Shown one piece after another: positions 27,408-45,797 of a stretch of DNA of 64,000 bases (positions are counted from its first letter, which is position 1; each line of letters opens with the position of its first letter). The position numbers and the translations under genes were made by a program. Where the stretch lies: IMG/VR virus record IMGVR_UViG_3300037116_000299, positions 1 to 64,000 of that record. One strand, given 5' to 3'. Under the pieces are notes generated by a model that saw nothing but the letters and a program-made list of their open reading frames with translations, ran no database searches and was not told the DNA's origin.

Positions 27408-27986
27408 TTACTCTCCCGTGAGGTACCCAAGTACGCGAGCGAAGTCGGTTTCCATAAACACCACGACTCCAACTCCATGTTTGTTACGCAGGACCAGTCC
27501 GCCGATCGGCTTTCCAGCGCGCTGCGCGTCTTCCCGAACCTTCCGCATCTCCGACAAGGAGACGACTGGGTTCTCGTTCTTCGATTGATTCTTGTTGTCG
27601 AGCGTGATCATGCCGGCGCTCATGTCGCCGTCCTTGAAACTGCGGCCGGAGTTGATGGTCGGAGTCACGTTCAGCTTCTTGACGGCCTGCGACTCGGAGT
27701 ACGCGGCCCGTTTACCGAGCGAACGCTTCGTCCGGTCGACGCCGAGGCGTTTGGTCAGACTGGCGGCTGCCTTGTCCTTCCGCTTGGTCAGCTTCTCCTG
27801 TTCCAGAACAGGATGCCGATCGCGCGGATTGATAGGACGCCATTGCGTTGTCGTGACATGTGGATTGTCCGAGGCCAGGCGGCAGTCGTTACAGTGAGCA
27901 CTGCCCTTCCCCATGTTGCTGACGGAATACTTACATCGGGAACCCACAGAACACTCTGTGGGCTCCCCGATCCGAAACAAAGCCAC
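27408..27986 (-). CDS. Cys-rich N-terminus + Hjc-like PD-(D/E)XK nuclease
   Basis: C..C..CNDC; SE..NSGRSFKDGD..LDNK. Confidence 0.6.
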   Translation of the reverse strand: MALFRIGEPTECSVGSRCKYSVSNMGKGSAHCNDCRLASDNPHVTTTQWRPINPRDRHPVLEQEKLTKRKDKAAASLTKRLGVDRTKRSLGKRAAYSESQAVKKLNVTPTINSGRSFKDGDMSAGMITLDNKNQSKNENPVVSLSEMRKVREDAQRAGKPIGGLVLRNKHGVGVVVFMETDFARVLGYLTGE

Positions 27987-29770: not shown

Positions 29771-29954
29771 AAATCACCTCATTCTTGATGGTTGCGACAA
29801 CCTGGGACGCTGGCAGTTGATCCTGCACGTACTTCTGGATATCCCGGGCCATCTGTTGAATCTTCTCGACCGTGGTTTCGGGCGGGAAGACCAGGCTTGC
29901 CCTGATCTCCAACAGCGCCGACCCCATGACGTACTGCTTCTTCTTGTTAGCCAA
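29760..29954 (-). CDS. small hypothetical protein
   Basis: Overlaps both neighbours in the operon. Confidence 0.55.
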   Translation of the reverse strand: MANKKKQYVMGSALLEIRASLVFPPETTVEKIQQMARDIQKYVQDQLPASQVVATIKNEVICGS

Positions 29955-31224
29955 AGGTCACCTCGGCCGCGGGATCGAGCAGCAGGGACTGCAGATCGAT
30001 GAGCGTGTACTCCAACTCCGGACGTGAGACCTTCAGGCAGTGACCCGCCACCGAGCAGTAGCTGCACTGCCAGTCGCCGATCCTCTGAATCTTGTTCTTG
30101 TTGTAGTCGGCGAACTTGGTCTTGCCGATCTCCTTGTGCTCGTGGAGCAGCTTGATCCGCTCCGGAGAGTAGGACCACTCGTACTCCGCCGGTGGCCAGT
30201 AGTCGTTCGGCAGGGCGCGCACTTCGTTCTCGAGATGCTTCAGGTAGGCCAGCTCGGCCGCCTGCTCATCCTTCGACTTCTTGATCGGGATCTCGACTTC
30301 CATCACATCCTGGGCGCAGAAGACCAGCTTCAACGTCGGAGGCGGCTGGATGCCACGATCGGACAGGTTCTGGGCGGCGGCGCCGCGGGCGCGGAACCAG
30401 TAGCCCTGGATGGTCTTATACCGGGTGTAGATCGATTCCAGGTTGAAGACCTTGAAGGGCACGCCATCGACCATCGGATAATGAGCACCGTCGAAGTCCT
30501 CGAAGATCTCGATGGTGAACTCCTTGCGGGAGGCATCGCCGCGGTCGACGTAGATCAGCTTGGCGCCAATCGGGCCGTCGTCCATCGACTCCACCATCTC
30601 CATGTCCGCTTCGCAGCGGTAGCGATGCTCGAAGGGAATTCCCTGGACGGCCAGTTCATGCTGCTTCTTGTTCATGGCCATCGTGTCGTCGAGCGACTTG
30701 CGGATCATTGCCTTCAGCCTCATGCCCGTGCGGGCTTCGAGGAGATAGAGGCATATCTGCATCAGGTTTTCGTACTTCGGTTTGTTCTCCGTTTCGATCT
30801 GTTTCTTGGCGAAGTAGCCGGAGTAGGACTTGATCTCGCAAAGCCAGCCGCGCTTGTCCACCGGGTCAATGGTGATGACGTCGAACTCGAGCGAGAGGGT
30901 GATGTCCCGGATGAAGTGCTTGACCCCGTTGGCCGCATAGATATTGGCCATCTTGGTCTGCTCGGTCAGGTTCGACTCAATCTCCCGGCCCATAACCCAT
31001 TTCCAGGCGCTGGTGGCGTCGGTGGGATTGGTGATGGAGAAGCCCATCATGCGCATATAAGCCGCACGGTGGCACTTGCCCGCGATGTTCCACAGGGTCT
31101 TGTCGACCCGCAGAGCGGATGCCTCGGACGGCCAGACTGCCGGCGTCTTGGAGGCGTAGGGTTCACCCATCTCGAACGCGATCAGGGCTGGATCGAGGTG
31201 CTTGAAGATCTCAAATTGAGCCAT
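29947..31224 (-). CDS. Cas4-like PD-(D/E)XK exonuclease with Fe-S staple (solo)
   Basis: GKCHR; EFD..CEIKS; QICLY; WQCSYCSVAGHC. Confidence 0.8.
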   Translation of the reverse strand: MAQFEIFKHLDPALIAFEMGEPYASKTPAVWPSEASALRVDKTLWNIAGKCHRAAYMRMMGFSITNPTDATSAWKWVMGREIESNLTEQTKMANIYAANGVKHFIRDITLSLEFDVITIDPVDKRGWLCEIKSYSGYFAKKQIETENKPKYENLMQICLYLLEARTGMRLKAMIRKSLDDTMAMNKKQHELAVQGIPFEHRYRCEADMEMVESMDDGPIGAKLIYVDRGDASRKEFTIEIFEDFDGAHYPMVDGVPFKVFNLESIYTRYKTIQGYWFRARGAAAQNLSDRGIQPPPTLKLVFCAQDVMEVEIPIKKSKDEQAAELAYLKHLENEVRALPNDYWPPAEYEWSYSPERIKLLHEHKEIGKTKFADYNKNKIQRIGDWQCSYCSVAGHCLKVSRPELEYTLIDLQSLLLDPAAEVTFG

Positions 31225-31231
31225 AGTTTCC

Positions 31232-31951
31232 TTATGCTGCGAGTGTTGCGATGATTGGTTTCTGGTAATGCGGGCAGTGACTTTCAAAGCCCGCGATTCT
31301 CATGCCCTCGATACGGGCGGCAATTCTGGGGAAGCCGTGGTCGATGTGGCCGGCGATGGGATACGACCCGTCGCAGGTCTGGAAGATCACAGAACCGTCC
31401 GGCTGCACCGCCAGGCGCAGTGGTCTGGTGTCCCAGTCACAGCGCTGACTGCAGGCGATCGGCCGACCCGCCAGGCGTCCCATGGGAAGGAACTCGGTCT
31501 CAGCTGCCTTGATCTCGAACTGTTCCGGGTAACGCTCGCAGAACTTGGCCAGGATCTCGGCGTTCTGGACCCGCTGATGAGCGGCCGTAGAACTGACGAA
31601 GACCTTGAATCCGAAGTGTTTGGCGTACCACTTCACGATGGTGGCGTCATGCTGGTCCCTCGACCAGTAGCCGTTCGAGATCATGAACTTGGGCTTGTCC
31701 TGTGGCAGCCAACCCATGATTCCGGCATTCTCGTTGAGGAACATCGTTGGTTCGCCGCCATAGAAGCCGAACGAATTGATGCGGTCCATCGGAATGGTTT
31801 GGATGAAGTCATAGAGCGCGCTCAGGCTCAAGCGATCTTTGACCTCGGGGCCGGAACTATACATGCAGAACGGGCAGCGCAGGTTGCACTCCCGCGAGTA
31901 CATGAAACTGAGATCGAAGAGATTGGAGGTTCCCTGTAGGTTCCAGACCAT
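31232..31951 (-). CDS. radical SAM protein
   Basis: CNLRCPFC, YGGEP, ISNGYW, GR..CSQRC..C. Confidence 0.9.
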   Translation of the reverse strand: MVWNLQGTSNLFDLSFMYSRECNLRCPFCMYSSGPEVKDRLSLSALYDFIQTIPMDRINSFGFYGGEPTMFLNENAGIMGWLPQDKPKFMISNGYWSRDQHDATIVKWYAKHFGFKVFVSSTAAHQRVQNAEILAKFCERYPEQFEIKAAETEFLPMGRLAGRPIACSQRCDWDTRPLRLAVQPDGSVIFQTCDGSYPIAGHIDHGFPRIAARIEGMRIAGFESHCPHYQKPIIATLAA

Positions 31952-32160
31952 CAGAAAGCCTCCGCGCGTCGCATGGAATCGGCGGTAAAACCAAGGCCCC
32001 AGATCACCATCACGAGTTGGCCGATCTGCGCCCAAACCGGGCCGTGCTCAACAATCGTCTGGTGAAGGGCAAACAGATTCGTAAGCGTCAGCAGCAGGCA
32101 CAGGAATCCAAAGCCCTGCCAGGCGATTCTGCCCGGAATTACTTCGTTGATTGGTCTCAT
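31951..32160 (-). CDS. small 2-TM membrane protein
   Basis: Two hydrophobic segments; TGATG coupling to the radical SAM gene. Confidence 0.6.
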   Translation of the reverse strand: MRPINEVIPGRIAWQGFGFLCLLLTLTNLFALHQTIVEHGPVWAQIGQLVMVIWGLGFTADSMRRAEAF

Positions 32161-32188
32161 ATCTCCCCAACATACTGTCAGTACGGAA

Positions 32189-32214
32189 GGCACCAAAGCT
32201 TGCGCCTTGGTGCC
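32189..32214 (-). terminator. hairpin with GCAA tetraloop after the AAA gene (weak U tract); overlaps a promoter-like motif
   Basis: mRNA GGCACCAAGGC-GCAA-GCUUUGGUGCC-UUCC. Confidence 0.55.
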
Positions 32215-32220
32215 CCCAGG

Positions 32221-34185
32221 TTATGCAGCGTCTGCCAGCTGCAGTTCTTCAGCCCGAGCGATCCAGTCCAACGGGCAGTAGTCGAAGTTGTCGACATGCA
32301 CCAGCGCCAGGTTGATCATCTTCTCCACTTCGCGAGTGTTCGGGACCACCACCTTGAAGGCGTGGTTCCAATCGTCCAGCTGAATGGTGAGGTCGAGCTT
32401 GCCGTCAAGCTTGCGGTCCTGGCGAGTCATCCTGCGATAGGCTGACACCAGGAGCTGCTCGATCTCAGCGCCGGTCCAGATCCTCTTCTTGTCGAAGAGA
32501 AGCTGACCCAGACCCTGTCCAGGCTTGTCCTTGGTGGCTTCCAGTTCCGGCGACAGAACCATCTTCTGTTTCCGAGTCTGGGCAGCCAGGATCGACCAGC
32601 GTCCCTTGTTGTCGCCCTTGACAGGCGGCAGCATGGGAATCTTGACGTCGATACGGCCAGCACGAATCAGGGCAGCGTCGAGCAGGTCAGGCCGGTTGCT
32701 GGCCATCAGGGCAACAACCTTGCCCTGGCGCCCAGGATCGGACAACCATGTCATCAAGTTGTTGAACATGCGGGCCGAGGTTCCGGAGTCGCCGCCGCCG
32801 GAGCGGCCGCTCGAAAGGACTGAGTCGACTTCGTCAAAGAACGCGATGCAGGGCGCCGCGGCTTCAATCGCCTCGATCAGCTTGCGCATGTTCTTCTCGG
32901 TCTCTCCAACAATGCCACCGAATACCTTCCCGAGATCGACCTGCAGGAAGTTGACACCAGCCTCGTAGGCCAGAGCCCAGGCGATCATGGTCTTGCCGGT
33001 GCCCGGAGGTCCGGTCATCAGGGCGCCGCGGGAGCAAAGCTTGCGGTTCCCTTCCTTGAGAGGCTTGATGATCTCCCAGCGACAGTAGTCCTTGAAGTGC
33101 TCGTGACCGCCGATCTGGTCGAAGCCGAAGGTGGGTTCCTTGATGTCCAGGATCCCGCCGTACTCGTCGTCCAGCGCCCGCTTCTTGCGTTCCTGCACCA
33201 TCGGGAAGTCCAGAGGGATGCGGGACCGCCAGGAGTTGAGGATCACGTCCTTGAGCTGCTTGCGATTCATGCCGGCCGACTGGTTGGCAAACTCGGCCAG
33301 GTTGAAGTCGGAAGCGAAGTCGATGCCGCGAACCTCGAGATTGTCCCCTACCTTCAGGGCCCCATCCAGCTCCACCTTGCGGAGGATCGACTGGTTGAAG
33401 TTGGTGATCCACTCAGTACGGTCCTGCAGATTCGGCTTGCGAACCACGTGACTGACTGCCAGCTCTCCGCGGATCGAGTCCTGAATGTCCGAGATGTGCC
33501 GGGTCATCAGGATGATCCGGTTCCGGGATCCAAGGACAGTGTCCTGGGCCCAGTTGCGGGCATTGATGATGGCCGCACGGTCCTGGACCAGGTTGGCGAT
33601 CTCGCCGCGCGGAAAGAGTGCGTCCGCGTCGGTGATGACCAGGGTCATGACCAGTTCCTTGCGTAAGGTTTGCTGCTGTGCCTTGCGGACCTCGTTGTCC
33701 ATCAGGATCTGCTTGGAGATCGAGAACCACTTGTTGAACAGCATCATGGCGGAGTCAGGGCTGCCGGGGTGGAAGTAGTCTTCTCCCATCTCGTTGATCG
33801 CCTCATCGCCCATGATCTGCTTGAAGGCGTCCTTGAACATCTCGTAGCTGCGGGTGTCCGGAAACTCCAGGCCCTGCGAGGTGTTGTAGAACGCCATGAC
33901 TCGGACCTTCTCCGAGACTCGGGCGTTGGTCTGCTGGACGCCGATCTCCTGGCTGTCGGGGCGCGCGTCCGGGTTCAGGCCGCGCTGGATGTTGTCATCG
34001 AAGTTGCAGGCCAGAACCTTCTTGATGCCAAGATTGCTGCCGGCGTTATCGACGAAGTCGTAGATGTTGCCGTACAGGAGGAACAGGTGCGAGATCTGCG
34101 CCTGATAGTCATCCTTGATAGCGCGGATGAAGTCAGGTTCGCCGCGCTGGATCACTCGGGTCGGTCGTGTCGTTCTGGGTGGCAT
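32221..34185 (-). CDS. AAA+ ATPase (Ycf46/CDC48-like; degenerate N-terminal + active C-terminal AAA module)
   Basis: FDQIGG, GPPGTGKT, GIVGETEKN, FFDEVD, ASNRPDLLDAALIRAGRID. Confidence 0.92.
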   Translation of the reverse strand: MPPRTTRPTRVIQRGEPDFIRAIKDDYQAQISHLFLLYGNIYDFVDNAGSNLGIKKVLACNFDDNIQRGLNPDARPDSQEIGVQQTNARVSEKVRVMAFYNTSQGLEFPDTRSYEMFKDAFKQIMGDEAINEMGEDYFHPGSPDSAMMLFNKWFSISKQILMDNEVRKAQQQTLRKELVMTLVITDADALFPRGEIANLVQDRAAIINARNWAQDTVLGSRNRIILMTRHISDIQDSIRGELAVSHVVRKPNLQDRTEWITNFNQSILRKVELDGALKVGDNLEVRGIDFASDFNLAEFANQSAGMNRKQLKDVILNSWRSRIPLDFPMVQERKKRALDDEYGGILDIKEPTFGFDQIGGHEHFKDYCRWEIIKPLKEGNRKLCSRGALMTGPPGTGKTMIAWALAYEAGVNFLQVDLGKVFGGIVGETEKNMRKLIEAIEAAAPCIAFFDEVDSVLSSGRSGGGDSGTSARMFNNLMTWLSDPGRQGKVVALMASNRPDLLDAALIRAGRIDVKIPMLPPVKGDNKGRWSILAAQTRKQKMVLSPELEATKDKPGQGLGQLLFDKKRIWTGAEIEQLLVSAYRRMTRQDRKLDGKLDLTIQLDDWNHAFKVVVPNTREVEKMINLALVHVDNFDYCPLDWIARAEELQLADAA

Positions 34186-34429
34186 TGGATACCTCAATGA
34201 ATTCGGACATGGCGAGCTGCCCGGGGCCGTTGGTTGACGGCATGTCCCGCAGGAATCGCTCGCGTGTGATGTAGTGTTCGAGATATGCCTGCAGTGCTGA
34301 CGTTTCGTCAGACGCAACCATCAGGCATTGTCGATAGATAGGGTCTTCCTCGATGCGTTCCATGTCGAGGGAGATCCGGGCCATCAAGCCGAGGCGCACC
34401 TCGAGCAGGTCTTCGGGACTGCGAGCCAC
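34133..34429 (-). CDS. hypothetical protein
   Basis: AAGGAG SD; in operon. Confidence 0.55.
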   Translation of the reverse strand: MARSPEDLLEVRLGLMARISLDMERIEEDPIYRQCLMVASDETSALQAYLEHYITRERFLRDMPSTNGPGQLAMSEFIEVSNATQNDTTDPSDPARRT

Positions 34430-34431
34430 GG

Positions 34432-34662
34432 CTACTCCTTTGCGGTGATGCTTTCGGAGCGAACCTTGGACGCAGTCAGCGTTCCAATCGAAACGCCCAG
34501 GGCCAGATGGTCGATCGCTTTGCCGCGGAGCTGCTTGCGCAGCAGTTTGCCTGCATCCTCGGCATTGTCGGCGACCATCTTCTTCTTTAGCCGGAAGGTG
34601 CCGGTCACCTGACCGGACACCTCGACTGTGAACTCGTGAAACCTATGCTGCTTCTTGGACAC
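34432..34662 (-). CDS. small basic hypothetical protein
   Basis: GTG with GGAGG SD; C-terminal part of track ORF 34432..35187. Confidence 0.55.
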   Translation of the reverse strand: MSKKQHRFHEFTVEVSGQVTGTFRLKKKMVADNAEDAGKLLRKQLRGKAIDHLALGVSIGTLTASKVRSESITAKE

Positions 34663-35257
34663 AGTTGGCCTCCAATCCGCCGATGTTGAACCGCAGCGCC
34701 TTGAGAATCGAGTACGCGTGCAGTGCGCCAGTGAGCGCCCCATGTGGTTTCGGCTCGGCTGGCAGGCCCAAGGCCTCGGCAACATAGTCCTTGCCCAGCT
34801 TGGCTTGTGGTCCGAGGATTCCCCAGGCAATGCTGGGAAGATCGAGCAAGTGGCGATCGAATGGACCAAAGCGCTTGAGGTCGTCATCGTTGTTATGGGG
34901 GAAGTAGGAATGGATCGGAGGCTGGATGAAGCCAAGCTCGAAGTGAGCATTCCACGACGACATGATCGCGTTCCGGCCGAACTCGAAGAACGAAGTCCAG
35001 GCATCCCGCCGGCGGACAGCGAATTGCCACCGCTCAGGGGTGTAGCCGTTGACCTCGAGGGCTTTGGGCTGAGCCAGCTCAAGACGCCAGGGCTCGATCT
35101 TGACCTGGAACGTGCTCTGGATCGCCAGCGTTCGCTGATGACAGAGGACTGCGCCGATCTCGAGGACATCGTGAATCGCGGGGTCAAGACCAGTGGTTTC
35201 GAGGTCCAGGATCAGCAGGGGACGATCTTGAAAGCTATACTTCTTCGCTTCAGGCAC
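34643..35257 (-). CDS. DEDDh 3'-5' exonuclease (DnaQ/RNase T-like)
   Basis: ILDLETTGLD, EIGAV, WNAHFE, LLD, HGALTGA (two expected Asp appear substituted). Confidence 0.85.
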   Translation of the reverse strand: MPEAKKYSFQDRPLLILDLETTGLDPAIHDVLEIGAVLCHQRTLAIQSTFQVKIEPWRLELAQPKALEVNGYTPERWQFAVRRRDAWTSFFEFGRNAIMSSWNAHFELGFIQPPIHSYFPHNNDDDLKRFGPFDRHLLDLPSIAWGILGPQAKLGKDYVAEALGLPAEPKPHGALTGALHAYSILKALRFNIGGLEANCVQEAA

Positions 35258-35909
35258 AGGCCAGCTCCAGTTCACCCTCATCTTCGTCGCGAGGGTGGTC
35301 AATCGGGTCCAGCGTCTCCGGGAAACCGGTGATCTGGATCAGACCGTCATCTAGGTTCACGTCCATTTCGACGATGTTGTTCGGGTTGAGGTCCTTGGAG
35401 GAGTAACGCTTGGTCAGGAAGTGAACTTCCTGGTTGCGCGAACCACACAAGGGCTTGTCGTCGCAGCGCTGCAGTTCGTTGTAGCGGCCGGCGATGATGA
35501 AGTCCATGCGGCTCAGGATTTCCTTGGCCAGCTTGGCGTCGCCGGGCACCATCATGCCCAGGCCTGGGTTCCACCACTGGAACTTGCCTGCTTCCAGCTC
35601 CTGGCGGGTGTATCCGGTGAAGCTGCCAACTGTGAATCCAGGTCGGCGCTCCTTGAGATAGTCGATCAGTACGTTCAACGCGGGCGCCTGCTGGAAGGGC
35701 TCTCCACCGGAGAACGTCACACCTTCAACGTCCTGCGCAAGGATCCAATCCGCGACCTCGCTGATCAGCATGTCCTTCTCGGGTGCAAAGGCATGGGTCT
35801 CGGGATTCCAACAGCTGGCGCACTTCAAGGTGCATCCCTGGAGCCATACCACGCTTCGTTCTCCGGGCCCATTGGCTCCGGATCGTGCAATCTTGTTGTG
35901 GATAAACAT
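35250..35909 (-). CDS. NrdG/PflA-like radical SAM protein (4Fe-4S single cluster)
   Basis: NGPGER..WLQGCTLKCASCWN, GVTFSGGEPFQQ, GSRNQ. Confidence 0.9.
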   Translation of the reverse strand: MFIHNKIARSGANGPGERSVVWLQGCTLKCASCWNPETHAFAPEKDMLISEVADWILAQDVEGVTFSGGEPFQQAPALNVLIDYLKERRPGFTVGSFTGYTRQELEAGKFQWWNPGLGMMVPGDAKLAKEILSRMDFIIAGRYNELQRCDDKPLCGSRNQEVHFLTKRYSSKDLNPNNIVEMDVNLDDGLIQITGFPETLDPIDHPRDEDEGELELACA

Positions 35910-35925
35910 CGGTTGTTCCCTTTCC

Positions 35926-36273
35926 CTAACTCGGCTTGCGCAAACCCTTGAAGCCTGCCGGATCTTCCTCGGTTAGCTCGGCGATCCGCTTCAGCAGTTG
36001 TTGATTGACCAGCTCGAGAGCCATCACCTCGGCGGTTTTGATCCGCGAACGGGTCACGCACGTGAGGCATTCGATGATCTCGAGTTCGAACATGTGGATC
36101 TTGCCCAACTCGGTGTGGACTAGCGCGCCGTTCTGCCAGTCCTCTTTTCGGTCGATCTGGCTATTGCCGATCAACACATAGCTTGTGGAGCCGCACCGCG
36201 GACATTTGATATCACTGCCATCAATGTCCGCGGCGCTCACAAATTGCTCCATCATTACCAGCACTTCGGCCAC
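35926..36273 (-). CDS. zinc-ribbon protein
   Basis: CPRCGS..CLTC. Confidence 0.65.
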   Translation of the reverse strand: MAEVLVMMEQFVSAADIDGSDIKCPRCGSTSYVLIGNSQIDRKEDWQNGALVHTELGKIHMFELEIIECLTCVTRSRIKTAEVMALELVNQQLLKRIAELTEEDPAGFKGLRKPS

Positions 36274-36279
36274 TGGAAG

Positions 36280-36477
36280 CTACCGCCCGTTGGTCAGAGC
36301 GTTGCCCTGACCCTGGCAGGGAGCTGCGCCCGGCTTCGGCGTGTCTTTGGTGACGGTGCCCATGGTTTCGAAGGCTTTCTGGACAGCTGCACAGCCGTTG
36401 CCCTGGAAGCCGTCGGTGTCGACCGTGAACTCCTTGTCGGTCACGTTCACGTCGATTGTGATGAGTTTTCTCGGCAT
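36280..36477 (-). CDS. DUF2997-like protein
   Basis: ITIDV..TVDTDGFQGNGC..F..MG. Confidence 0.75.
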   Translation of the reverse strand: MPRKLITIDVNVTDKEFTVDTDGFQGNGCAAVQKAFETMGTVTKDTPKPGAAPCQGQGNALTNGR

Positions 36478-36520
36478 CTTCTTTACCTTTCTAGGTGGTG
36501 AGGGAGGGTGAAGCGGGCGC

Positions 36521-36940
36521 TTACGCGCCCACCTTCTCGTATTGCAAGCGGACATGCTGCTTGCCGTTGACCTCGTACTTCTGAGGGGCTCCAACCACAC
36601 GCAGGCCCAGTTTGGCAGCCGTGGCCTTGGCCTTGGTGACGATGTACTGTCCTTCGACCTTGTCCATGAAGTTCTCCGGGGTGATCGGGCTCATGATGTA
36701 CGGATCCATGCCGATGGTGTAGAACCCATCCGCTTCTTTCTTGAATCCGATGTCGCCACGCGACCCGGTGTCTTCCTTGCGGAGGAGGATCTGGTAGCCC
36801 TTGCGGTTGTCGGCTCGCGTATCTCCGCGAACCGTCTGGTCCTGTCCTACGACGGGCGAGTAGCCCATGTGCTTCAGGGTGTCGACCAAGCACTTCTCGT
36901 GGTTCATCGACTTGGCTTTGAGCTGACGGAAACTGCTCAT
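36521..36940 (-). CDS. DUF1257 (Ycf35-like) protein
   Basis: MSSF..LVDTLKHMGY..VRG..DIGFKKEADG.Y..D.Y..QY..G. Confidence 0.8.
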   Translation of the reverse strand: MSSFRQLKAKSMNHEKCLVDTLKHMGYSPVVGQDQTVRGDTRADNRKGYQILLRKEDTGSRGDIGFKKEADGFYTIGMDPYIMSPITPENFMDKVEGQYIVTKAKATAAKLGLRVVGAPQKYEVNGKQHVRLQYEKVGA

Positions 36941-37653
36941 ACGGTGGTACCTTCTTTCGGTTGGAATGGCTCGAGCATGTTGCGCATCTGGTACTCGAGG
37001 CTGTAAGTGCTGGTGAGTTTGTCGCGCGGAAAGAGCAGCGCCGGCGGGGCTTGCCCATAAGCCGGCACGATCCGAACCCCCTGTTGTCCCGCCCCCGCGC
37101 TAGTGGCAAACGCTTCCAGACCAGGGGTCGGCATCGTTGCAACGTACGCGTTGGTGGAGCGCCAGAGTAACGCCATGTCCTTGAGGACCAGATCTTCCCT
37201 CTTGCTGAAACATCCAGTCAGAGAGCAGGTGTGCCCGCCTGGTTCAAAGTAGCGATCAGTCGTGTTCTTTGCGCCATCGATTCCGTGAAACCGAACGATG
37301 TGGTTCTTGAGCACGATATGCTGTCCGTGCTCCTGCGCTGTGGGGTAGAACGTCGAGGTGTACTGGCTGTAGCCGGCTTTGGACTCGTCATTGGGAACCC
37401 ATTTCAACAGGGTGCCGAACTTCTTTGCGTCCGAGCTGGTGCTGATAAAGGCGGTCTCCTCATACATCCAGAGATTGACCTCTTCATCAGTCAGAAAGCA
37501 GGCCTGGATAACATTCCCACAGGTAGGGCACCGGTGTCCGTAGATCAGATCCCGTTCGAGGTTCGGCGCCTTCGGGTTCCCCCGAAAGGCCGGCCGCGGT
37601 GTGAATAAGAGCTTGCAGGACTTGTCACCGGGAGCCCCTGTCAGTTCAATCAA
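36937..37653 (-). CDS. hypothetical protein (CPTC..HTC..C)
   Basis: Coupled overlaps. Confidence 0.7.
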   Translation of the reverse strand: MIELTGAPGDKSCKLLFTPRPAFRGNPKAPNLERDLIYGHRCPTCGNVIQACFLTDEEVNLWMYEETAFISTSSDAKKFGTLLKWVPNDESKAGYSQYTSTFYPTAQEHGQHIVLKNHIVRFHGIDGAKNTTDRYFEPGGHTCSLTGCFSKREDLVLKDMALLWRSTNAYVATMPTPGLEAFATSAGAGQQGVRIVPAYGQAPPALLFPRDKLTSTYSLEYQMRNMLEPFQPKEGTTV

Positions 37654-42411: not shown

Positions 42412-43368
42412 TTAGGCCTTCGCCCAGATGTCGGCTTCAACAACCTGGACACCCCAGTCGTACTTCTCCGGTCCCAGCGCGATCCAGCCTGGGTTGCCGA
42501 GCGTTGGTACGATCCGGTGATAAGCAGCATTCATGCAGTCGGCCATGATCTTCTTGACCGGCGGGATATGATCCTGACGGACGTGCATGACAATCTCGTC
42601 ATGTACGACCAGGAGGAACCTGGCATCGTAGATGAGCGGCGCCGTAAACGACCCGCCACGTACAGCCTTGTAGATCTCCGGCATCGCCATCTTCAGGATG
42701 TCGGCATTGCCGGCCTGAATTGGCATGTTGCCGGCCCACCGCTTGATCTGAGAGAGCAACTCCTCAGCTTCCGGATCCCCGGCGGCTGGCAGTTGGTAGA
42801 ACCGCTTGCGGCCGCGCGGGCTGGCGCTATAACCCAGCTCGATGGCCAGACGGCCCTGGTTGTCCAGCCAGGCCTTGAGAACCTTGAAGGTGCAGAAGAA
42901 CTCCTCGATGAAGTCTTTGGCTTCCTCGACGGTCATACCCGTCATCAGAGCCACCCGAGTGGGGCCTGCCCCGTAGGGAACGCCAAAGGTCACAGTCTTG
43001 ATGCGTGACCGGATCAGGGCGAGTTCGTTGTGGCGGGGATGGCTCTCGGTGCTGCGAGCCTCCTCCATCTCTTCGTAAGTAAACTTGAAGCGGGCGCCAA
43101 ACACCTTCGTTGCATTGAAGGTGTGAACGTCCTGTCCGGAGTTGATGGCGGCGATCAGGATGGGATCTCCCGAAGCGTGCGCCATCAGCTTTACTTCGAT
43201 CTGCGCGTAGTCCGAGGCCAGGATCTTGTAGCCTTCGTCGGCCCGGATTGCCGAGCGCGGGTCGGGGACTGACCACTCCAGGACGTTCGTCTTGAAGTTC
43301 CAGAAATAGGACTTACCTGCAAAGTCCCCGACCTTTTCCCGCTCAACCAACACTGCTGCTTCTGCCAC
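42412..43368 (-). CDS. polA: DNA polymerase A, C-terminal (palm/fingers) subunit of a split enzyme
   Basis: Motif A DYAQIE; motif B RSRIKTVTFGVPYG; GNMPIQAGNAD; motif C VHDEIV. Confidence 0.92.
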   Translation of the reverse strand: MAEAAVLVEREKVGDFAGKSYFWNFKTNVLEWSVPDPRSAIRADEGYKILASDYAQIEVKLMAHASGDPILIAAINSGQDVHTFNATKVFGARFKFTYEEMEEARSTESHPRHNELALIRSRIKTVTFGVPYGAGPTRVALMTGMTVEEAKDFIEEFFCTFKVLKAWLDNQGRLAIELGYSASPRGRKRFYQLPAAGDPEAEELLSQIKRWAGNMPIQAGNADILKMAMPEIYKAVRGGSFTAPLIYDARFLLVVHDEIVMHVRQDHIPPVKKIMADCMNAAYHRIVPTLGNPGWIALGPEKYDWGVQVVEADIWAKA

Positions 43369-44372: not shown

Positions 44373-45797
44373 TTAGGCAGCCTCCTTGAGCTGCTGGCTT
44401 TCGACGGCCAGGCGTTCTGCACGCATGGCTGCGATCTGTGCTCCGAATGCCGACATGACATGCTCGATCTCTTCGGGCCGGCGCACCGGGGCGTACAGCT
44501 CCTTCGGCTTCGGAAACTGCTGTGCATCAGAGCTGAAGCGTCCGGTCGCGATCGTGGCCTTGTCTTCCCCGCCACTCTTGCGTCCTTCTTCTTCCCCTGA
44601 GCCCAGCTGCTTGAAGCGAGGGTGCCACTTGCCGGTGTGCTGGTTGATCTTGTCGACCATGTTGGTGCCGTAGGTCGAGGTCATCTTGGTGACGTTCGAG
44701 AACTCGGCCATCAGCTTGCACATCTCGCGCTGTTCCGGAGAGAAGTCCTTGCCCTTGACCTTGTTCTTGGTGACGTCCTTGAGGGTGTCGCGGCGAATGT
44801 CATCGAGATTGATATCGATCTCGCGCAAAGCGGCCAGCTTCTCGGCGTTCGACTTGAGGTTGAATACCGAGTCCAGTCCGGGGATCAACGATCCAACCAG
44901 ACTTCCCTGCTGCTTCTTCATCGCCGTGAACAGCTTGAAGATCTTCTCGCCGAGGTCGGACTCATGCTGCGTCCAATACTCGATGATCTGGCGCATGATC
45001 GGCACGCTCAGGTTGACGCCGTGGATCTCCATCTCCGCGGTGGGGAAGATGACATCGAACTCATCCCTGGCAGTGTCCAGAAGCTGCCACTGTTTCAGCA
45101 GCTTAGACTGGTCCTGCATCAGCGGGAACATCAGCACGATATCCCGGGCAGAGTAGTACGCCATGCTGCGCGTCAGCTTCCTCCGCTCGTCATCGAGACC
45201 GATGAACATGTCGCGTACGGCCTTGTTGATCAACCAGTAAGGCTCATGCCGGCGAACGCAGTCCGCCAGGCCTACCTTCATGGCCAGAAGCCCGGCAACC
45301 AGGATCTGTTCGGCGAGCATGGAGCAGTAAACCCGCTGCATGTGGACGCCGTACTTGACCAGGAGCCACTTGAAGTCATAGATCGCGTTGTGCAGCAGGT
45401 GTAGGAACTTGTCCGACTCCAGCCACGCTTTGAACTCGACCACCAGGTCGGGATCGATCAGATAGACCTGGTCCTCGTTGCCGATCTGGAACAACACCAT
45501 CCGGGTATCCGGATTGACCGGGTTCATCGAATAGCCCTTGTCGCCCTTGACGGTGCGGCCGGTGGTCTCGGTGTCGATTCCATGGATCCGGATGCGGTCC
45601 AGGAACTCTTTAATTGGGGCCAGGTCTCCAGTCGAGGTGACCTGGATGACCTGGTTTTGATCCCAGGCCCCAGGTTCCCACGCACTTTGCAGCCAATCCG
45701 GCCGGCCAACGATGCGATAGTTCACTGGAACGTGCATCTCCAGTGGAGTACACACCGGACCACGGGAGTGACCGCTACTGCGTCCTCTAGGTGCCAT
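44373..45797 (-). CDS. polA: DNA polymerase A, N-terminal subunit (3'-5' exonuclease + thumb)
   Basis: Exo I IDTETTG, Exo II HNAIYD, Exo III YSARD; EMEIHGV; FNLKS; TYG; HPRFKQ; ATGRFSS..QQFP. Confidence 0.92.
   Translation of the reverse strand: MAPRGRSSGHSRGPVCTPLEMHVPVNYRIVGRPDWLQSAWEPGAWDQNQVIQVTSTGDLAPIKEFLDRIRIHGIDTETTGRTVKGDKGYSMNPVNPDTRMVLFQIGNEDQVYLIDPDLVVEFKAWLESDKFLHLLHNAIYDFKWLLVKYGVHMQRVYCSMLAEQILVAGLLAMKVGLADCVRRHEPYWLINKAVRDMFIGLDDERRKLTRSMAYYSARDIVLMFPLMQDQSKLLKQWQLLDTARDEFDVIFPTAEMEIHGVNLSVPIMRQIIEYWTQHESDLGEKIFKLFTAMKKQQGSLVGSLIPGLDSVFNLKSNAEKLAALREIDINLDDIRRDTLKDVTKNKVKGKDFSPEQREMCKLMAEFSNVTKMTSTYGTNMVDKINQHTGKWHPRFKQLGSGEEEGRKSGGEDKATIATGRFSSDAQQFPKPKELYAPVRRPEEIEHVMSAFGAQIAAMRAERLAVESQQLKEAA

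What the first reader, a model, noticed from the sequence alone, without database searches (positions are those of the whole stretch)
31232..36940. DUF1257 + DUF2997 + Zn-ribbon + two radical SAMs + tandem AAA+ ATPase: an uncharacterised module inside the replication arm
Seen, in order of transcription: DUF1257-like, DUF2997-like (GFxGxxC), Zn ribbon, NrdG-like radical SAM, DEDDh exonuclease, two small ORFs, a 654-aa AAA+ ATPase with degenerate N-module and intact SRH, a 2-TM peptide and a second radical SAM. Known: DUF1257/DUF2997/Ycf46-like AAA genes recur together and lack an assigned function; NrdG-type activases normally act on a glycyl-radical enzyme. Seen: the only RNR here is class II and no NrdD is in the window. 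Inference: the radical SAM modifies one of the small proteins (e.g. the Gly/Cys motif of DUF2997) and the AAA+ ring remodels or unfolds the product or host targets. This is the best candidate here for an undescribed multi-gene system.
Basis: partly seen in the sequence, partly recalled or inferred. Interest (0 to 1): 0.72.

Follow-up and report, generated by a model that had tools for sequence, protein, structure and literature searches.

The report
Orphan radical-SAM activase plus AAA+ module
A roughly 214-kb phage of Acidobacteria carries a four-gene set (an NrdG-like radical-SAM activase, an AAA+ unfoldase and two small proteins of unknown function) that recurs as a unit in phages, bacteria and archaea but never beside the activase's usual target, so it looks like an undescribed protein-radical system.

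Summary
Comparative genomics splits them into a core and insertions.

- **Core:** DUF1257, DUF2997, an NrdG-like radical SAM (rSAM1) and a 654-aa AAA+ with a pseudo-D1 and an active D2. In this ~200-kb phage lineage the core also includes p238, a Zn-ribbon protein and p98.
- **Insertions:** the DEDDh exonuclease, and the TM-peptide plus second radical SAM, are specific to this lineage.

rSAM1 belongs to a distinct clade of ~200-aa NrdG-like proteins.
- Fourteen of 14 viral loci and 71 of 80 loci from bacterial and archaeal MAGs place it beside AAA+, DUF1257 and/or DUF2997. At least three gene orders occur.
- NrdD is never adjacent.
- NrdD is absent from this phage, from five other module-bearing viral records and from three of five carrier genomes.
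- Sampling from DUF1257 instead, all nine loci had an adjacent radical SAM.
- One phage subclade kept the trio and lost rSAM1.

The proposed target (the Gly/Cys motif of DUF2997) remains untested. No literature describing the module was found.

The parts
36937..37653 (-). p238: 238-aa protein of unknown function. It is the first gene of the module in the ~200-kb phage lineage (T1) and overlaps the DUF1257 start by 4 nt.
   Evidence: Found directly upstream of DUF1257 in all T1 relatives. No Pfam, PHROG, NCBIfam or Atlas hit.
36521..36940 (-). DUF1257/Ycf35-family protein, 139 aa. Core component.
   Evidence: Pfam PF06868 at 29.5 bits. AF2 model pLDDT 91.6. AFDB DUF1257/Ycf35 clusters match at TM 0.79-0.87. 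M1-S2 and G65 are invariant and F66 nearly invariant (DIGF motif) in 30 module proteins.
36280..36477 (-). DUF2997-like protein, 65 aa, with a G-F-x-G-x-x-C motif. Core component.
   Evidence: PF11211 at 14.5 bits at this exact place. Orthologues carry PF11211. C29 is invariant and G23/G26 are at least 90% conserved in 33 module proteins.
35926..36273 (-). Zn-ribbon protein, 115 aa (CPRC...CLTC). Accessory specific to T1.
   Evidence: Weak Com/Lar-like hits. Orthologues occur in most T1 loci, including two that lack rSAM1. It is absent from the other module types.
35250..35909 (-). rSAM1: NrdG-like radical SAM of the glycyl-radical-activase type, 219 aa. Core component.
   Evidence: Fer4_12 at 91.7 bits and NrdG TIGR02491 at 78 bits, below the cut-off. 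NGPGxR, CX3CX2C and SGGEP are invariant. It belongs to a monophyletic module-linked clade.
34643..35302 (-). DEDDh (RNase_T/DnaQ-like) 3'-5' exonuclease. A lineage-specific insertion, not core.
   Evidence: PF00929 at 48 bits. Present only in the window and its nearest clade, L005-L007/L091-L092.
34432..34660 (-). Small ORF of about 76 aa between the exonuclease and p98.
   Evidence: 44% identical to the 77-aa gene at the same position in L005. Start and stop read from the sequence.
34133..34429 (-). p98: 98-aa protein whose 3' end overlaps the AAA+ start. T1-conserved and a likely partner of the AAA+.
   Evidence: Lies immediately upstream of, and overlapping, the AAA+ gene in all T1 loci, including those without rSAM1. 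Carries an invariant P..TNGP motif.
32221..34185 (-). AAA+ ATPase, 654 aa: a pseudo-ATPase D1-like module plus an active classical-clade D2. Core component.
   Evidence: PF00004 at 117 bits. Walker A/B and SRH are invariant in 30 homologues. Model pLDDT 85. Aligns to p97/NVL/Rix7 D1+D2 over residues 12-653 with Z 25.
31951..32160 (-). 69-aa hydrophobic peptide with one clear and one marginal TM segment. Its stop overlaps the rSAM2 start by 1 nt. Accessory cassette.
31232..31951 (-). rSAM2: second radical SAM, about 240 aa, CX3CX2C. Accessory and not part of the module.
   Evidence: Radical_SAM at 28-29 bits. Absent from the nearest relatives. Its family has 18 members, one of which sits upstream of the polymerase genes in another 215-kb phage.

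Best explanation
The real unit is a four-gene module carried by phages and other mobile elements of bacteria and archaea. It consists of an AAA+ unfoldase-type ATPase, a DUF1257 (Ycf35-like) alpha/beta protein, the ~65-aa DUF2997 protein with its G..G..C turn, and a dedicated clade of NrdG-like radical SAM enzymes.

Shown here:
- The radical SAM keeps every sequence hallmark of a glycyl-radical-enzyme activase.
- It forms its own clade.
- It is genomically tied to the trio and not to NrdD.
- The AAA+ has the two-tier build of a Cdc48/p97-type machine, with a dead upper tier.

Inferred:
- The radical SAM uses SAM and its 4Fe-4S cluster to abstract a hydrogen from a backbone glycine, or a nearby residue, of a module protein. 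The most likely target is the DUF2997/DUF1257 pair, which occurs fused in at least one relative.
- The AAA+ ring then binds, presents, unfolds or recycles that radical-bearing or modified protein, or a client of it.

In this phage lineage the module sits between the helicase and the RecA/primase genes. It has picked up lineage-specific extras: p238, the Zn-ribbon protein, p98, an exonuclease and a second radical-SAM cassette. Its biological role (host takeover, counter-defence or replication support) is not known.
For: Co-occurrence starting from the radical SAM:
- The 14 best-scoring of 80 IMG/VR loci all lie beside AAA+/DUF1257/DUF2997. All lower-scoring loci do not, and 15 of those lie beside NrdD.
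- Of the 80 best loci in bacterial and archaeal assemblies, 53 have all three partners on the same strand within 7 kb, 11 have DUF1257+DUF2997 and 7 have AAA+ with or without DUF1257. None has NrdD.

Independent architectures:
- T1: hel-p238-DUF1257-DUF2997-Znr-rSAM-p98-AAA.
- T2: AAA(~500 aa)-DUF1257-DUF2997-rSAM.
- T3: AAA...DUF2997-rSAM-DUF1257.
- Archaeal: rSAM-DUF1257-AAA, or rSAM-AAA-DUF2997-DUF1257.

Phylogeny:
- The 17 module-linked radical SAMs are monophyletic with SH-like support 0.88.

Co-occurrence starting from DUF1257:
- Seven of 7 loci in 201 Acidobacteriota genomes and 2 of 2 in 251 Chloroflexota genomes have an adjacent radical SAM. Seven are module-type and two are a different ~330-aa type.

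NrdD:
- Absent from 6 of 6 module-bearing viral records, four of them at least 95% complete.
- Absent from 3 of 5 carrier genomes, and far from the module in the other two.

Sequence and fold:
- Activase hallmarks NGPGxR, CX3CX2C and SGGEP are invariant, and the alignment to PFL-AE covers the Gly-rich loop.
- Fusions: DUF1257-like+DUF2997 in L018 and a possible AAA+DUF1257 in L202.
- The AAA+ fold is as stated.
Against: - The trio persists without the radical SAM in one nested T1 subclade (L010-L014) and in the distant relatives L018-L021. The trio can therefore work without it.
- Nothing in the genome matches the canonical glycyl-radical-domain fingerprint RVxG[FWY]x6-8[FL]x4Qx2[IV]x2R (motif from PMC13450708).
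- The DUF2997 Cys and the DUF1257 DIGF motif are also conserved where the radical SAM is missing.
- G65 of DUF1257 is predicted to lie at the start of a beta-strand rather than at a hairpin tip.
- The only complex prediction attempted gave no answer.
- All evidence is genomic. No substrate, product or phenotype is known.
- From my own knowledge: many Acidobacteriaceae are aerobes, which fits poorly with an oxygen-labile glycyl radical.
Confidence: 0.45

Rival explanations
1. rSAM1 is an ordinary NrdG that the phage supplies to activate the host's class III ribonucleotide reductase. Its position next to the trio is only inherited synteny.
For: - Its best family match is NrdG, over the full profile length.
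- Source databases name its homologues 'anaerobic RNR activating protein'.
- Two carrier genomes (Methanoregulaceae, Scalinduaceae) do encode NrdD elsewhere.
Against: - It scores below the NrdG equivalog cut-off, 78 against 126 bits.
- It belongs to a separate clade from the NrdD-adjacent NrdGs.
- The adjacency to the trio recurs in different gene orders, phyla and domains.
- Three of five carrier genomes lack NrdD, including the Acidobacteriaceae MAG that holds a prophage-like copy of this module.
- The phage already has a class II RNR.
Confidence: 0.07
2. DUF1257 and DUF2997 are not substrates. They are redox or Fe-S helpers that deliver electrons or stabilise the cluster of the radical SAM. 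The true substrate would be the AAA+ itself or a host or phage client that the AAA+ threads.
For: - In cyanobacteria the DUF2997-ycf35 pair is clustered with the 4Fe-4S ferredoxin Fed7 (PMC4284462), so the pair accompanies Fe-S proteins in two settings.
- DUF2997 has one invariant Cys.
- A second, unrelated radical SAM type can take the same place.
- In a minority of loci only the AAA+ was detected next to the radical SAM.
Against: - One Cys per 65-aa protein is little to bind a cluster.
- DUF1257 shows no cofactor-binding fold.
- In at least one 'AAA-only' locus the small genes were present but had been missed by the profiles (L199).
- The trio persists without any radical SAM.
Confidence: 0.15
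3. The radical SAM acts on a nucleotide or on DNA/RNA (modification or repair). This would fit the module's place in the replication arm beside a helicase, RecA, primase and an exonuclease. The AAA+ would be a replication-associated remodeller.
For: - Genomic position in T1 phages.
- Fer4_12-type enzymes include the nucleotide-modifying QueE, for which there is a weak hit at 27 bits.
Against: - The Gly-rich NGPGxR loop and full-length NrdG similarity point to a protein substrate.
- In MAG and smaller-phage contexts the module travels without replication genes.
- The exonuclease is a late insertion.
Confidence: 0.08
4. The grouping is coincidental. The trio and the radical SAM are unrelated cargo genes that merely hitch-hike together on one family of mobile elements.
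For: - Sporadic distribution: 3% of sampled Acidobacteriota and under 1% of Chloroflexota.
- Mobile-element neighbours, DUF3150 and a ThiF-like gene.
- Several MAG loci are nearly identical to one another.
Against: - Rearranged gene orders keep the same four families together.
- AAA+ subfamilies as distant as 26-29% identity are involved.
- The module occurs in bacteria, archaea and at least three phage size classes.
- The radical SAM tree separates cleanly by context.
Confidence: 0.05

Closest known systems
NrdG / NrdD (class III anaerobic ribonucleotide reductase and its activase)
   Same: rSAM1 aligns to the whole NrdG profile. It has CX3CX2C, the NGPGxR loop, SGGEP and GSxNQ motifs.
   Different: - Below the NrdG equivalog cut-off.
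- About 40 residues longer, with a conserved C-terminal extension (E...TGFP). Many T1 members also have an acidic tail.
- Forms its own clade.
- Never beside NrdD, and NrdD is often absent from the genome.
PFL-activating enzyme with the small 'spare-part' glycyl radical protein GrcA/YfiD
   Same: An activase of the same type acting on a small autonomous protein is a precedent for a small-protein substrate (PMC13450708). The PFL-AE Gly-rich loop and cluster motif align with rSAM1.
   Different: - GrcA carries the canonical glycyl-radical-domain fingerprint. Neither DUF2997, DUF1257 nor any other ORF of this genome does.
- No PFL-type enzyme (Gly_radical) is present in the phage.
Cdc48/p97/VAT, NVL and Rix7 (type II classical-clade AAA+ unfoldases with adaptor proteins)
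   Same: - Two stacked AAA modules by fold, with Z 23-25 over 465-490 residues.
- The D2 has Walker A/B, arginine fingers and a pore-loop-like LVG.
- It is accompanied by small proteins that could serve as adaptors.
   Different: - No N-terminal double-psi-barrel domain.
- D1 lacks Walker A (HGN..D instead).
- CDC48 family score is 119 bits against a cut-off of 803.
- The partners are DUF proteins and a radical SAM, not ubiquitin-type adaptors.
Cyanobacterial/plastid Ycf35 (DUF1257), DUF2997, Fed7 cluster and the Ycf46 (slr0374) stress operon
   Same: The same two small-protein families are involved. The DUF1257 model matches Ycf35 clusters. The pair is again next to an Fe-S protein (PMC4284462). 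Ycf46 is an AAA+ of unknown mechanism (PMC7496141).
   Different: - No radical SAM is reported there.
- The function there is also unknown.
- I could not verify the domain content of slr0373/slr0376 or search cyanobacterial genomes with these tools.
Radical SAM maturases of small proteins and peptides (RiPP-type systems)
   Same: A radical SAM gene sits directly after a ~65-aa protein that has an invariant Cys and conserved Gly residues.
   Different: - rSAM1 has no SPASM/twitch domain and is NrdG-like rather than maturase-like.
- DUF2997 has no leader/core organisation.
- An AAA+ and DUF1257 are obligatory companions.

Membership tests
Glycyl-radical-enzyme activases (NrdG/PflA type radical SAM) | N-terminal CX3CX2C cluster motif | tested here: met
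   GCTLKCASC in the window. C26/C30/C33 are invariant in 33 module proteins.
Glycyl-radical-enzyme activases (NrdG/PflA type radical SAM) | Gly-rich (D/N)GPGxR loop just before the cluster motif. This loop contacts the peptide substrate in PFL-AE (my knowledge of PDB 3CB8). | tested here: met
   NGPGER aligns with DGPGIR of PFL-AE. N13, G14, P15, G16 and R18 are invariant.
Glycyl-radical-enzyme activases (NrdG/PflA type radical SAM) | Score above the curated NrdG equivalog cut-off | tested here: not met
   TIGR02491 scores 78 bits against a cut-off of 126.1. The other NrdG and PflA models score far below their cut-offs.
Glycyl-radical-enzyme activases (NrdG/PflA type radical SAM) | A cognate glycyl radical enzyme (NrdD, PFL-type) in the genome or neighbourhood | tested here: not met
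   - PF13597 and PF01228 are absent from the 214-kb record.
- NrdD is absent beside 80 of 80 MAG loci, from 5 other viral records and from 3 of 5 carrier genomes.
- No GRD fingerprint is present.
Glycyl-radical-enzyme activases (NrdG/PflA type radical SAM) | Generates a protein glycyl radical | not testable with these tools
   Needs anaerobic biochemistry and EPR.
DUF1257 / Ycf35 | Pfam PF06868 above the gathering score, and the same fold | tested here: met
   29.5 bits against 22.2. AFDB DUF1257/Ycf35 clusters match at TM 0.79/0.87 with probability 1.0.
DUF2997 | Pfam PF11211 above the gathering score | tested here: inconclusive
   The window protein scores 14.5 bits against 24.1. Its positional orthologues in L003, L004 and L018 carry PF11211. 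The G-x-x-G-x-x-C motif is present.
Cdc48/p97-type (type II, classical clade) AAA+ | Active AAA module with Walker A, Walker B and SRH arginines | tested here: met
   GPPGTGKT, D451-E452, R498, R508 and R511 are invariant. PF00004 scores 117 bits.
Cdc48/p97-type (type II, classical clade) AAA+ | Two tandem AAA modules | tested here: met
   Met by predicted fold only. Model residues 12-653 align to D1+D2 of p97, NVL and Rix7. D1 has no Walker A.
Cdc48/p97-type (type II, classical clade) AAA+ | N-terminal substrate/adaptor-binding domain, and a family score above the cut-off | tested here: not met
   The model starts directly with the D1-like module. TIGR01243 scores 119 bits against 803.
Class III RNR system (NrdD + NrdG) | NrdD catalytic subunit present | tested here: not met
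   The phage RNR is class II NrdJ.
Known anti-phage defence systems (PADLOC-DB v2) | Match of the small proteins or the radical SAM to a defence family | tested here: not met
   Only generic AAA (IetA-like), DEDDh and weak viperin hits. Nothing for DUF1257, DUF2997, p98 or p238.

The most novel reading that the evidence does not exclude
DUF2997, alone or in complex with DUF1257, is a new minimal carrier of a protein radical (glycyl and/or thiyl). It would lie outside the ten-stranded-barrel glycyl radical enzyme superfamily. A dedicated NrdG-derived activase would install the radical and a Cdc48-like AAA+ machine would handle it. This would be a mobile 'radical plus unfoldase' system that phages and other mobile elements of bacteria and archaea use against host or rival targets.
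Probability: 0.25. Interest if true: 0.9.

Novelty: new variant of a known kind. Interest (0 to 1): 0.78.

Why it matters
Glycyl-radical activases are thought to exist only as partners of the large glycyl radical enzymes. The 2026 review of that field (PMC13450708) mentions no AAA+-linked, phage-borne or enzyme-less activases.

This work points to a whole clade of such activases. It is spread over phages, many bacterial phyla and methanogen-related archaea, and it is wired to an AAA+ unfoldase and two widespread proteins of unknown function. DUF1257 is Ycf35 of cyanobacteria and plastids.

If the activase does act on one of these proteins, three things follow:
- It would give the first biochemical handle on Ycf35/DUF2997, and possibly on Ycf46-type ATPases.
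- It would extend protein-radical chemistry to a new scaffold.
- It would reveal a new activity that large soil phages bring into their hosts.

The four proteins are small and soluble-looking, and the assay (anaerobic SAM cleavage, EPR, intact mass) is standard, so the idea is directly testable.

Tried and rejected
- **Single-sequence locus search:** searching IMG/VR with the AAA+ alone found nothing. An alignment was needed.
- **Cultured phages:** no close relative of the AAA+, DUF1257 or primase. The lineage is known only from metagenomes.
- **Defence and naming libraries:** PADLOC, NCBIfam and PHROGs gave no informative name for DUF1257, DUF2997, p98 or p238. An ESM Atlas look-up of p238 gave nothing.
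- **Complex prediction** (rSAM1 + DUF2997, with SAM and a 4Fe-4S cluster): no verdict, score 0.02. This is not evidence either way.
- **PDB-wide structural search with the DUF1257 model:** only generic alpha+beta matches with Z at most 6.8 (KA1, IntS9/11 CTD, adaptin appendage). No functional lead.
- **Glycyl-radical-domain fingerprint scan** of all six frames of the 214-kb genome: no full match. The core pentapeptide occurs at chance level. The RVLGY near the C-terminus of p192 is not conserved.
- **Is rSAM2 a counterpart of other radical SAMs?** I compared it with the alternative ~330-aa radical SAM of L259/L260 and with the extra radical SAM of the rSAM1-less phage G005. Only generic cluster-motif similarity was found.
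- **Gly motif against radical SAM presence:** I asked whether the conserved Gly residues of DUF2997 track presence of the radical SAM. They do not do so cleanly. G26 is lost in L010-L014, but it is also lost in the radical-SAM-positive L184, L187 and L202.
- **Promoter/terminator scan:** no minus-strand sites inside 29.3-41.5 kb. This is compatible with one long transcription unit but is weak evidence.
- **Literature searches:** no description of the module.

Full report
**What is in the window**

The window is the first 64 kb of a 214.3-kb IMG/VR virus record. The record is classed as a provirus and CheckV rates it 99% complete. All genes of the finding lie on the minus strand in a tight, partly overlapping array. 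No promoter-like or terminator-like site on that strand falls between about 41.5 and 29.3 kb.

In order of transcription the genes are:
- **p238**, 36937-37653. No family hit.
- **DUF1257**, 36521-36940. Pfam 29.5 bits, above the cut-off.
- **DUF2997-like**, 36280-36477, 65 aa, carrying DGFQGNGC. Only 14.5 bits, but positional orthologues carry PF11211.
- **Zn-ribbon protein**, 35926-36273, four Cys.
- **rSAM1**, 35250-35909. Fer4_12 at 91.7 bits. It matches NrdG TIGR02491 end to end at 78 bits, below the cut-off of 126.
- **RNase_T/DEDDh exonuclease**, 34643-35302.
- **Two small ORFs**, 34432-34660 and p98 at 34133-34429.
- **AAA+**, 32221-34185, 654 aa.
- **69-aa hydrophobic peptide**, 31951-32160. 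One clear and one marginal TM segment.
- **rSAM2**, 31232-31951. Its start overlaps the peptide's stop by one base.

The surroundings are a replication arm:
- a split family-A polymerase;
- a 961-aa helicase;
- RecA;
- a primase-helicase;
- a class II (B12) RNR at 48095-50968.

**The AAA+**

Thirty full-length homologues share invariant GPPGTGKT, DE and SRH arginines. At the position where an N-terminal Walker A would be, they have a conserved HGN..D.

An AlphaFold2 model (pLDDT 85) aligns over residues 12-653 to D1+D2 of p97, NVL and Rix7. The alignments have Z 23-25 over 465-490 residues.

So 'tandem AAA+ with a degenerate N-module' is right by predicted fold. The protein lacks a Cdc48-type N-domain and falls far below the CDC48 family cut-off.

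**Core and insertions within the phage lineage**

The AAA+ has more than 100 full-length relatives at 36-67% identity, many on contigs of 180-230 kb. Gene maps of these contigs and IMG/VR loci give a conserved order, which I call T1:

helicase - p238 - DUF1257 (one or two copies) - DUF2997 - Zn ribbon - rSAM1 - ... - p98 - AAA+ - p446 - p160 - RecA - p192 - primase.

- The exonuclease occurs only in the window and its nearest clade.
- The peptide + rSAM2 pair is absent from the nearest relatives.
- The rSAM2 family has 18 members. In another 215-kb phage it sits upstream of the polymerase genes.

These three genes are insertions and not part of the system.

One T1 subclade (L010-L014) keeps p238, DUF1257, DUF2997, p98 and the AAA+ but has no rSAM1.
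- A 100%-complete genome of that subclade has only an unrelated radical SAM 160 kb away.
- In an AAA+ tree this subclade is monophyletic and nested among rSAM1-bearing lineages, so this is a secondary loss.
- More distant AAA+ relatives (L018-L021, 26-29% identity) also lack it.
- L018 has a single 234-aa protein with a DUF1257-like N-part and a DUF2997 C-part directly upstream of the AAA+.

**The radical SAM is tied to the trio far beyond this lineage**

This is the main result.

Context of individual relatives:
- An exhaustive HMMER search found 1568 representatives at E no greater than 1e-10, many of them ~200-aa proteins aligned end to end.
- Three of them, at 36-44% identity, all lie beside DUF1257/DUF2997/AAA+. 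One of these is in the same phage lineage. The other two have different orders and different AAA+ lengths, 521 and 611 aa.

Scan of IMG/VR with a radical SAM alignment (80 loci):
- The 14 loci that score at least 158 bits against a module-type profile all have the partners.
- The 66 loci that score 150 bits or less have none.
- Fifteen of those 66 matched an NrdD profile within 7 kb. The six proteins that profile was built from were confirmed as NrdD by Pfam.

Tree:
- The 17 distinct module-linked enzymes form one clade with SH-like support 0.88. It is separate from the canonical 150-170-aa NrdGs.

Architectures:
- **T1**, as above.
- **T2**: AAA+(~490-520 aa)-DUF1257-DUF2997-rSAM, on 45-103-kb phage contigs and many Acidobacteriota MAG contigs.
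- **T3**: AAA+(530-573 aa)...DUF2997-rSAM-DUF1257.
- **Archaeal forms**: rSAM-DUF1257-AAA+ and rSAM-AAA+-DUF2997-DUF1257.

Scan of one genome per prokaryote species returned 80 loci. Most are from Acidobacteriota. Others come from:
- Chloroflexota, Nitrospirota and Planctomycetota;
- Verrucomicrobiota, Myxococcota and Desulfobacterota;
- Chromatiaceae;
- Methanomicrobiales.

Of these 80 loci:
- 53 have all three partners on the same strand within 7 kb;
- 11 have DUF1257+DUF2997;
- 7 have the AAA+ with or without DUF1257;
- 9 have none, and some of those are on short contigs;
- none has NrdD.

In at least one 'AAA-only' locus the small genes were visibly present but had been missed by my profiles (L199).

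The best of these loci (L171, 68% identity, T1 order) lies inside a 3.26-Mb contig of an Acidobacteriaceae MAG. This names the likely host group.

**The reverse test and NrdD**

Starting from DUF1257 instead:
- Six of 201 sampled Acidobacteriota genomes have DUF1257, at seven loci.
- In five of those six genomes an AAA+ lies directly beside DUF1257. The sixth is the T1 prophage copy, where the AAA+ lies further along the module.
- Five loci have the module-type radical SAM.
- Two have a different ~330-aa Radical_SAM/Fer4_12 protein upstream of the AAA+.
- In Chloroflexota two of 251 genomes have DUF1257, both with DUF2997 and the module-type enzyme adjacent.

The sporadic distribution and the neighbours (DUF3150, a ThiF-like gene) suggest mobile-element cargo.

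NrdD (PF13597):
- Absent from this phage.
- Absent from five other module-bearing viral records, three of them 95-100% complete.
- Absent from three of five carrier genomes, and megabase-distant from the module in the other two.
- By contrast, three of five viral records with canonical NrdG-type genes have NrdD elsewhere in the record. The other two are 14-43% fragments.

- An nrdD elsewhere in the element: not found.
- The radical SAM not co-conserved with the trio: false, it is co-conserved.
- No interaction detected among the proteins: not tested here.

**What the sequences say about chemistry**

rSAM1 and its clade keep several motifs:
- NGPGxR, CX3CX2C and SGGEP are invariant across 33 diverse module proteins. 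GSxNQ is kept in nearly all of them.
- The first block aligns to DGPGIR...CX3CX2C of PFL-activating enzyme.
- From my knowledge of the PFL-AE peptide complex, that Gly-rich loop binds the glycine-bearing substrate loop.
- Compared with canonical NrdG, the clade has a ~40-residue C-terminal extension (E181...TG195FP). Many T1 members also have an acidic tail ending in (D/E)LVxA.

The likely chemistry is therefore hydrogen abstraction from a protein backbone. Several points cut against a canonical target:
- No ORF in the genome matches the glycyl-radical-domain fingerprint quoted in the 2026 review (PMC13450708).
- In 33 module-linked DUF2997 proteins C29 is invariant and G23 and G26 are at least 90% conserved (G-[FVAI]-x-G-x-x-C). 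However, the Cys and G23 persist in the rSAM1-less phages, and G26 is also missing in some rSAM-positive loci.
- In 30 DUF1257 proteins M1-S2 and G65 are invariant and F66 is nearly so (DIGF motif). G65 is predicted at the start of a strand.

The DUF1257 model is confident (pLDDT 91.6). It matches AFDB DUF1257/Ycf35 clusters. Its PDB matches are only generic alpha+beta platforms.

DUF2997 is the gene most often immediately upstream of the radical SAM. For that reason I rank the DUF2997/DUF1257 pair as the most likely substrate, at low confidence. A complex prediction of rSAM1 with DUF2997 gave no verdict.

**Mechanism and rivals**

I commit to the following.

Shown by genomics:
- A four-gene functional unit exists.
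- Its activase-type radical SAM has been re-partnered from NrdD to the AAA+/DUF1257/DUF2997 trio.

Inferred:
- The enzyme makes a backbone radical, or a radical-derived modification, on the DUF2997/DUF1257 pair.
- The pseudo-D1/D2 AAA+ ring presents, unfolds or recycles that protein or a client of it.

The rivals are:
- host-NrdD activation;
- DUF1257 and DUF2997 acting as redox or Fe-S helpers, suggested by the cyanobacterial DUF2997-ycf35-fed7 cluster (PMC4284462);
- a nucleic-acid substrate;
- mere hitch-hiking.

Each is listed with its evidence in the Rival explanations section. The loss of the radical SAM in two AAA+ lineages shows that the trio has a function without it. The radical step may therefore be regulatory, conditional (for instance anoxic) or replaceable.

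**Comparison with what is known**

The parts belong to known families. These are GRE activases (three sequence features met, the equivalog score and GRE partner not met), DUF1257/Ycf35, DUF2997 and classical-clade AAA+.

I found no description of the combination:
- Only five papers in the library mention DUF1257 or DUF2997, and none mentions a radical SAM.
- The Ycf46 operon of Synechocystis is still of unknown function.
- PADLOC has no such system.
- The 2026 GRE review mentions no AAA+, phage or orphan activase.

**Limits**
- All evidence is computational.
- Most genomes are MAGs or metagenomic contigs, so absences are provisional. Some near-identical loci are not independent.
- My DUF profiles were built from the loci themselves.
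- I could not sample cyanobacteria.

Noticed in passing
Relatives of window 32221-34185 (proteins P0014, P0039, P0042, P0085, P0095, P0099, P0107); L004:16042-18166: Several homologues of the AAA+ are ~980-1060 aa and carry Hint/LAGLIDADG intein domains. RecA in one relative is also interrupted by a LAGLIDADG-type element.
   Followed up: no
window 31232-32160 (-); L262:5001-5759: The 69-aa hydrophobic peptide and rSAM2 overlap stop/start by one base. rSAM2 belongs to a tiny family of 18 proteins. In another 215-kb phage it sits upstream of the polymerase genes, so it looks like a roaming accessory cassette, possibly a peptide plus its maturase.
   Followed up: partly
window 42412-43368 and 44373-45797 (-): The family-A DNA polymerase is split into two genes: exonuclease plus N-terminal part, and C-terminal part. 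They are separated by about 1 kb. The same split is seen in a distant 215-kb relative.
   Followed up: no
window 29947-31287 (-): p446 is conserved just after the AAA+ in all T1 phages and ends in C...CxxCxxxxxC. It has no Pfam hit. The pattern recalls Cas4/RecB-type Fe-S nucleases.
   Followed up: no
window 27408-27986 (-): p192, between RecA and the primase, has invariant NSGR...DGD...D.K.QS motifs suggestive of a nuclease. Its C-terminal RVLGY resembles a glycyl-radical core motif but is not conserved.
   Followed up: yes
L171:8745-10720 (Acidobacteriaceae MAG, 3.26-Mb contig): This is a prophage-like copy of the T1 module with 68% rSAM identity. Its AAA+ gene is broken into at least four frame pieces. 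The cause could be long-read indel errors or decay of the prophage.
   Followed up: no
L018:9216-9920; L202:3796-5739; AFDB A0A7C1WI43: Natural fusions were seen. L018 has DUF1257-like + DUF2997 in one 234-aa protein. L202 has AAA+ + DUF1257 in one 647-aa ORF, which may be an indel artefact. An AFDB 'DUF2997 protein' of 228 aa has a middle part that aligns to the DUF1257 model.
   Followed up: partly
L259:1484-2488; L260:2313-3302: In two Acidobacteriota genomes a different ~330-aa radical SAM with a Cys-rich N-terminus sits upstream of AAA+-DUF1257(-DUF2997) in place of the NrdG-like enzyme.
   Followed up: partly
window 35250-35290 (C-terminus of rSAM1); window 36280-36300 (C-terminus of DUF2997): Many T1 rSAM1 proteins end in an acidic tail with a conserved (D/E)LVxA terminus. 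Most T1 DUF2997 proteins end in G-R or G-K. Both look like short docking motifs.
   Followed up: no
L184:7661-8581; L221:12242-13048: In Acidobacteriota MAGs the T2 module is followed by a DUF3150 protein. In one case a ThiF-like gene lies nearby. These are neighbours typical of plasmid or ICE cassettes.
   Followed up: no
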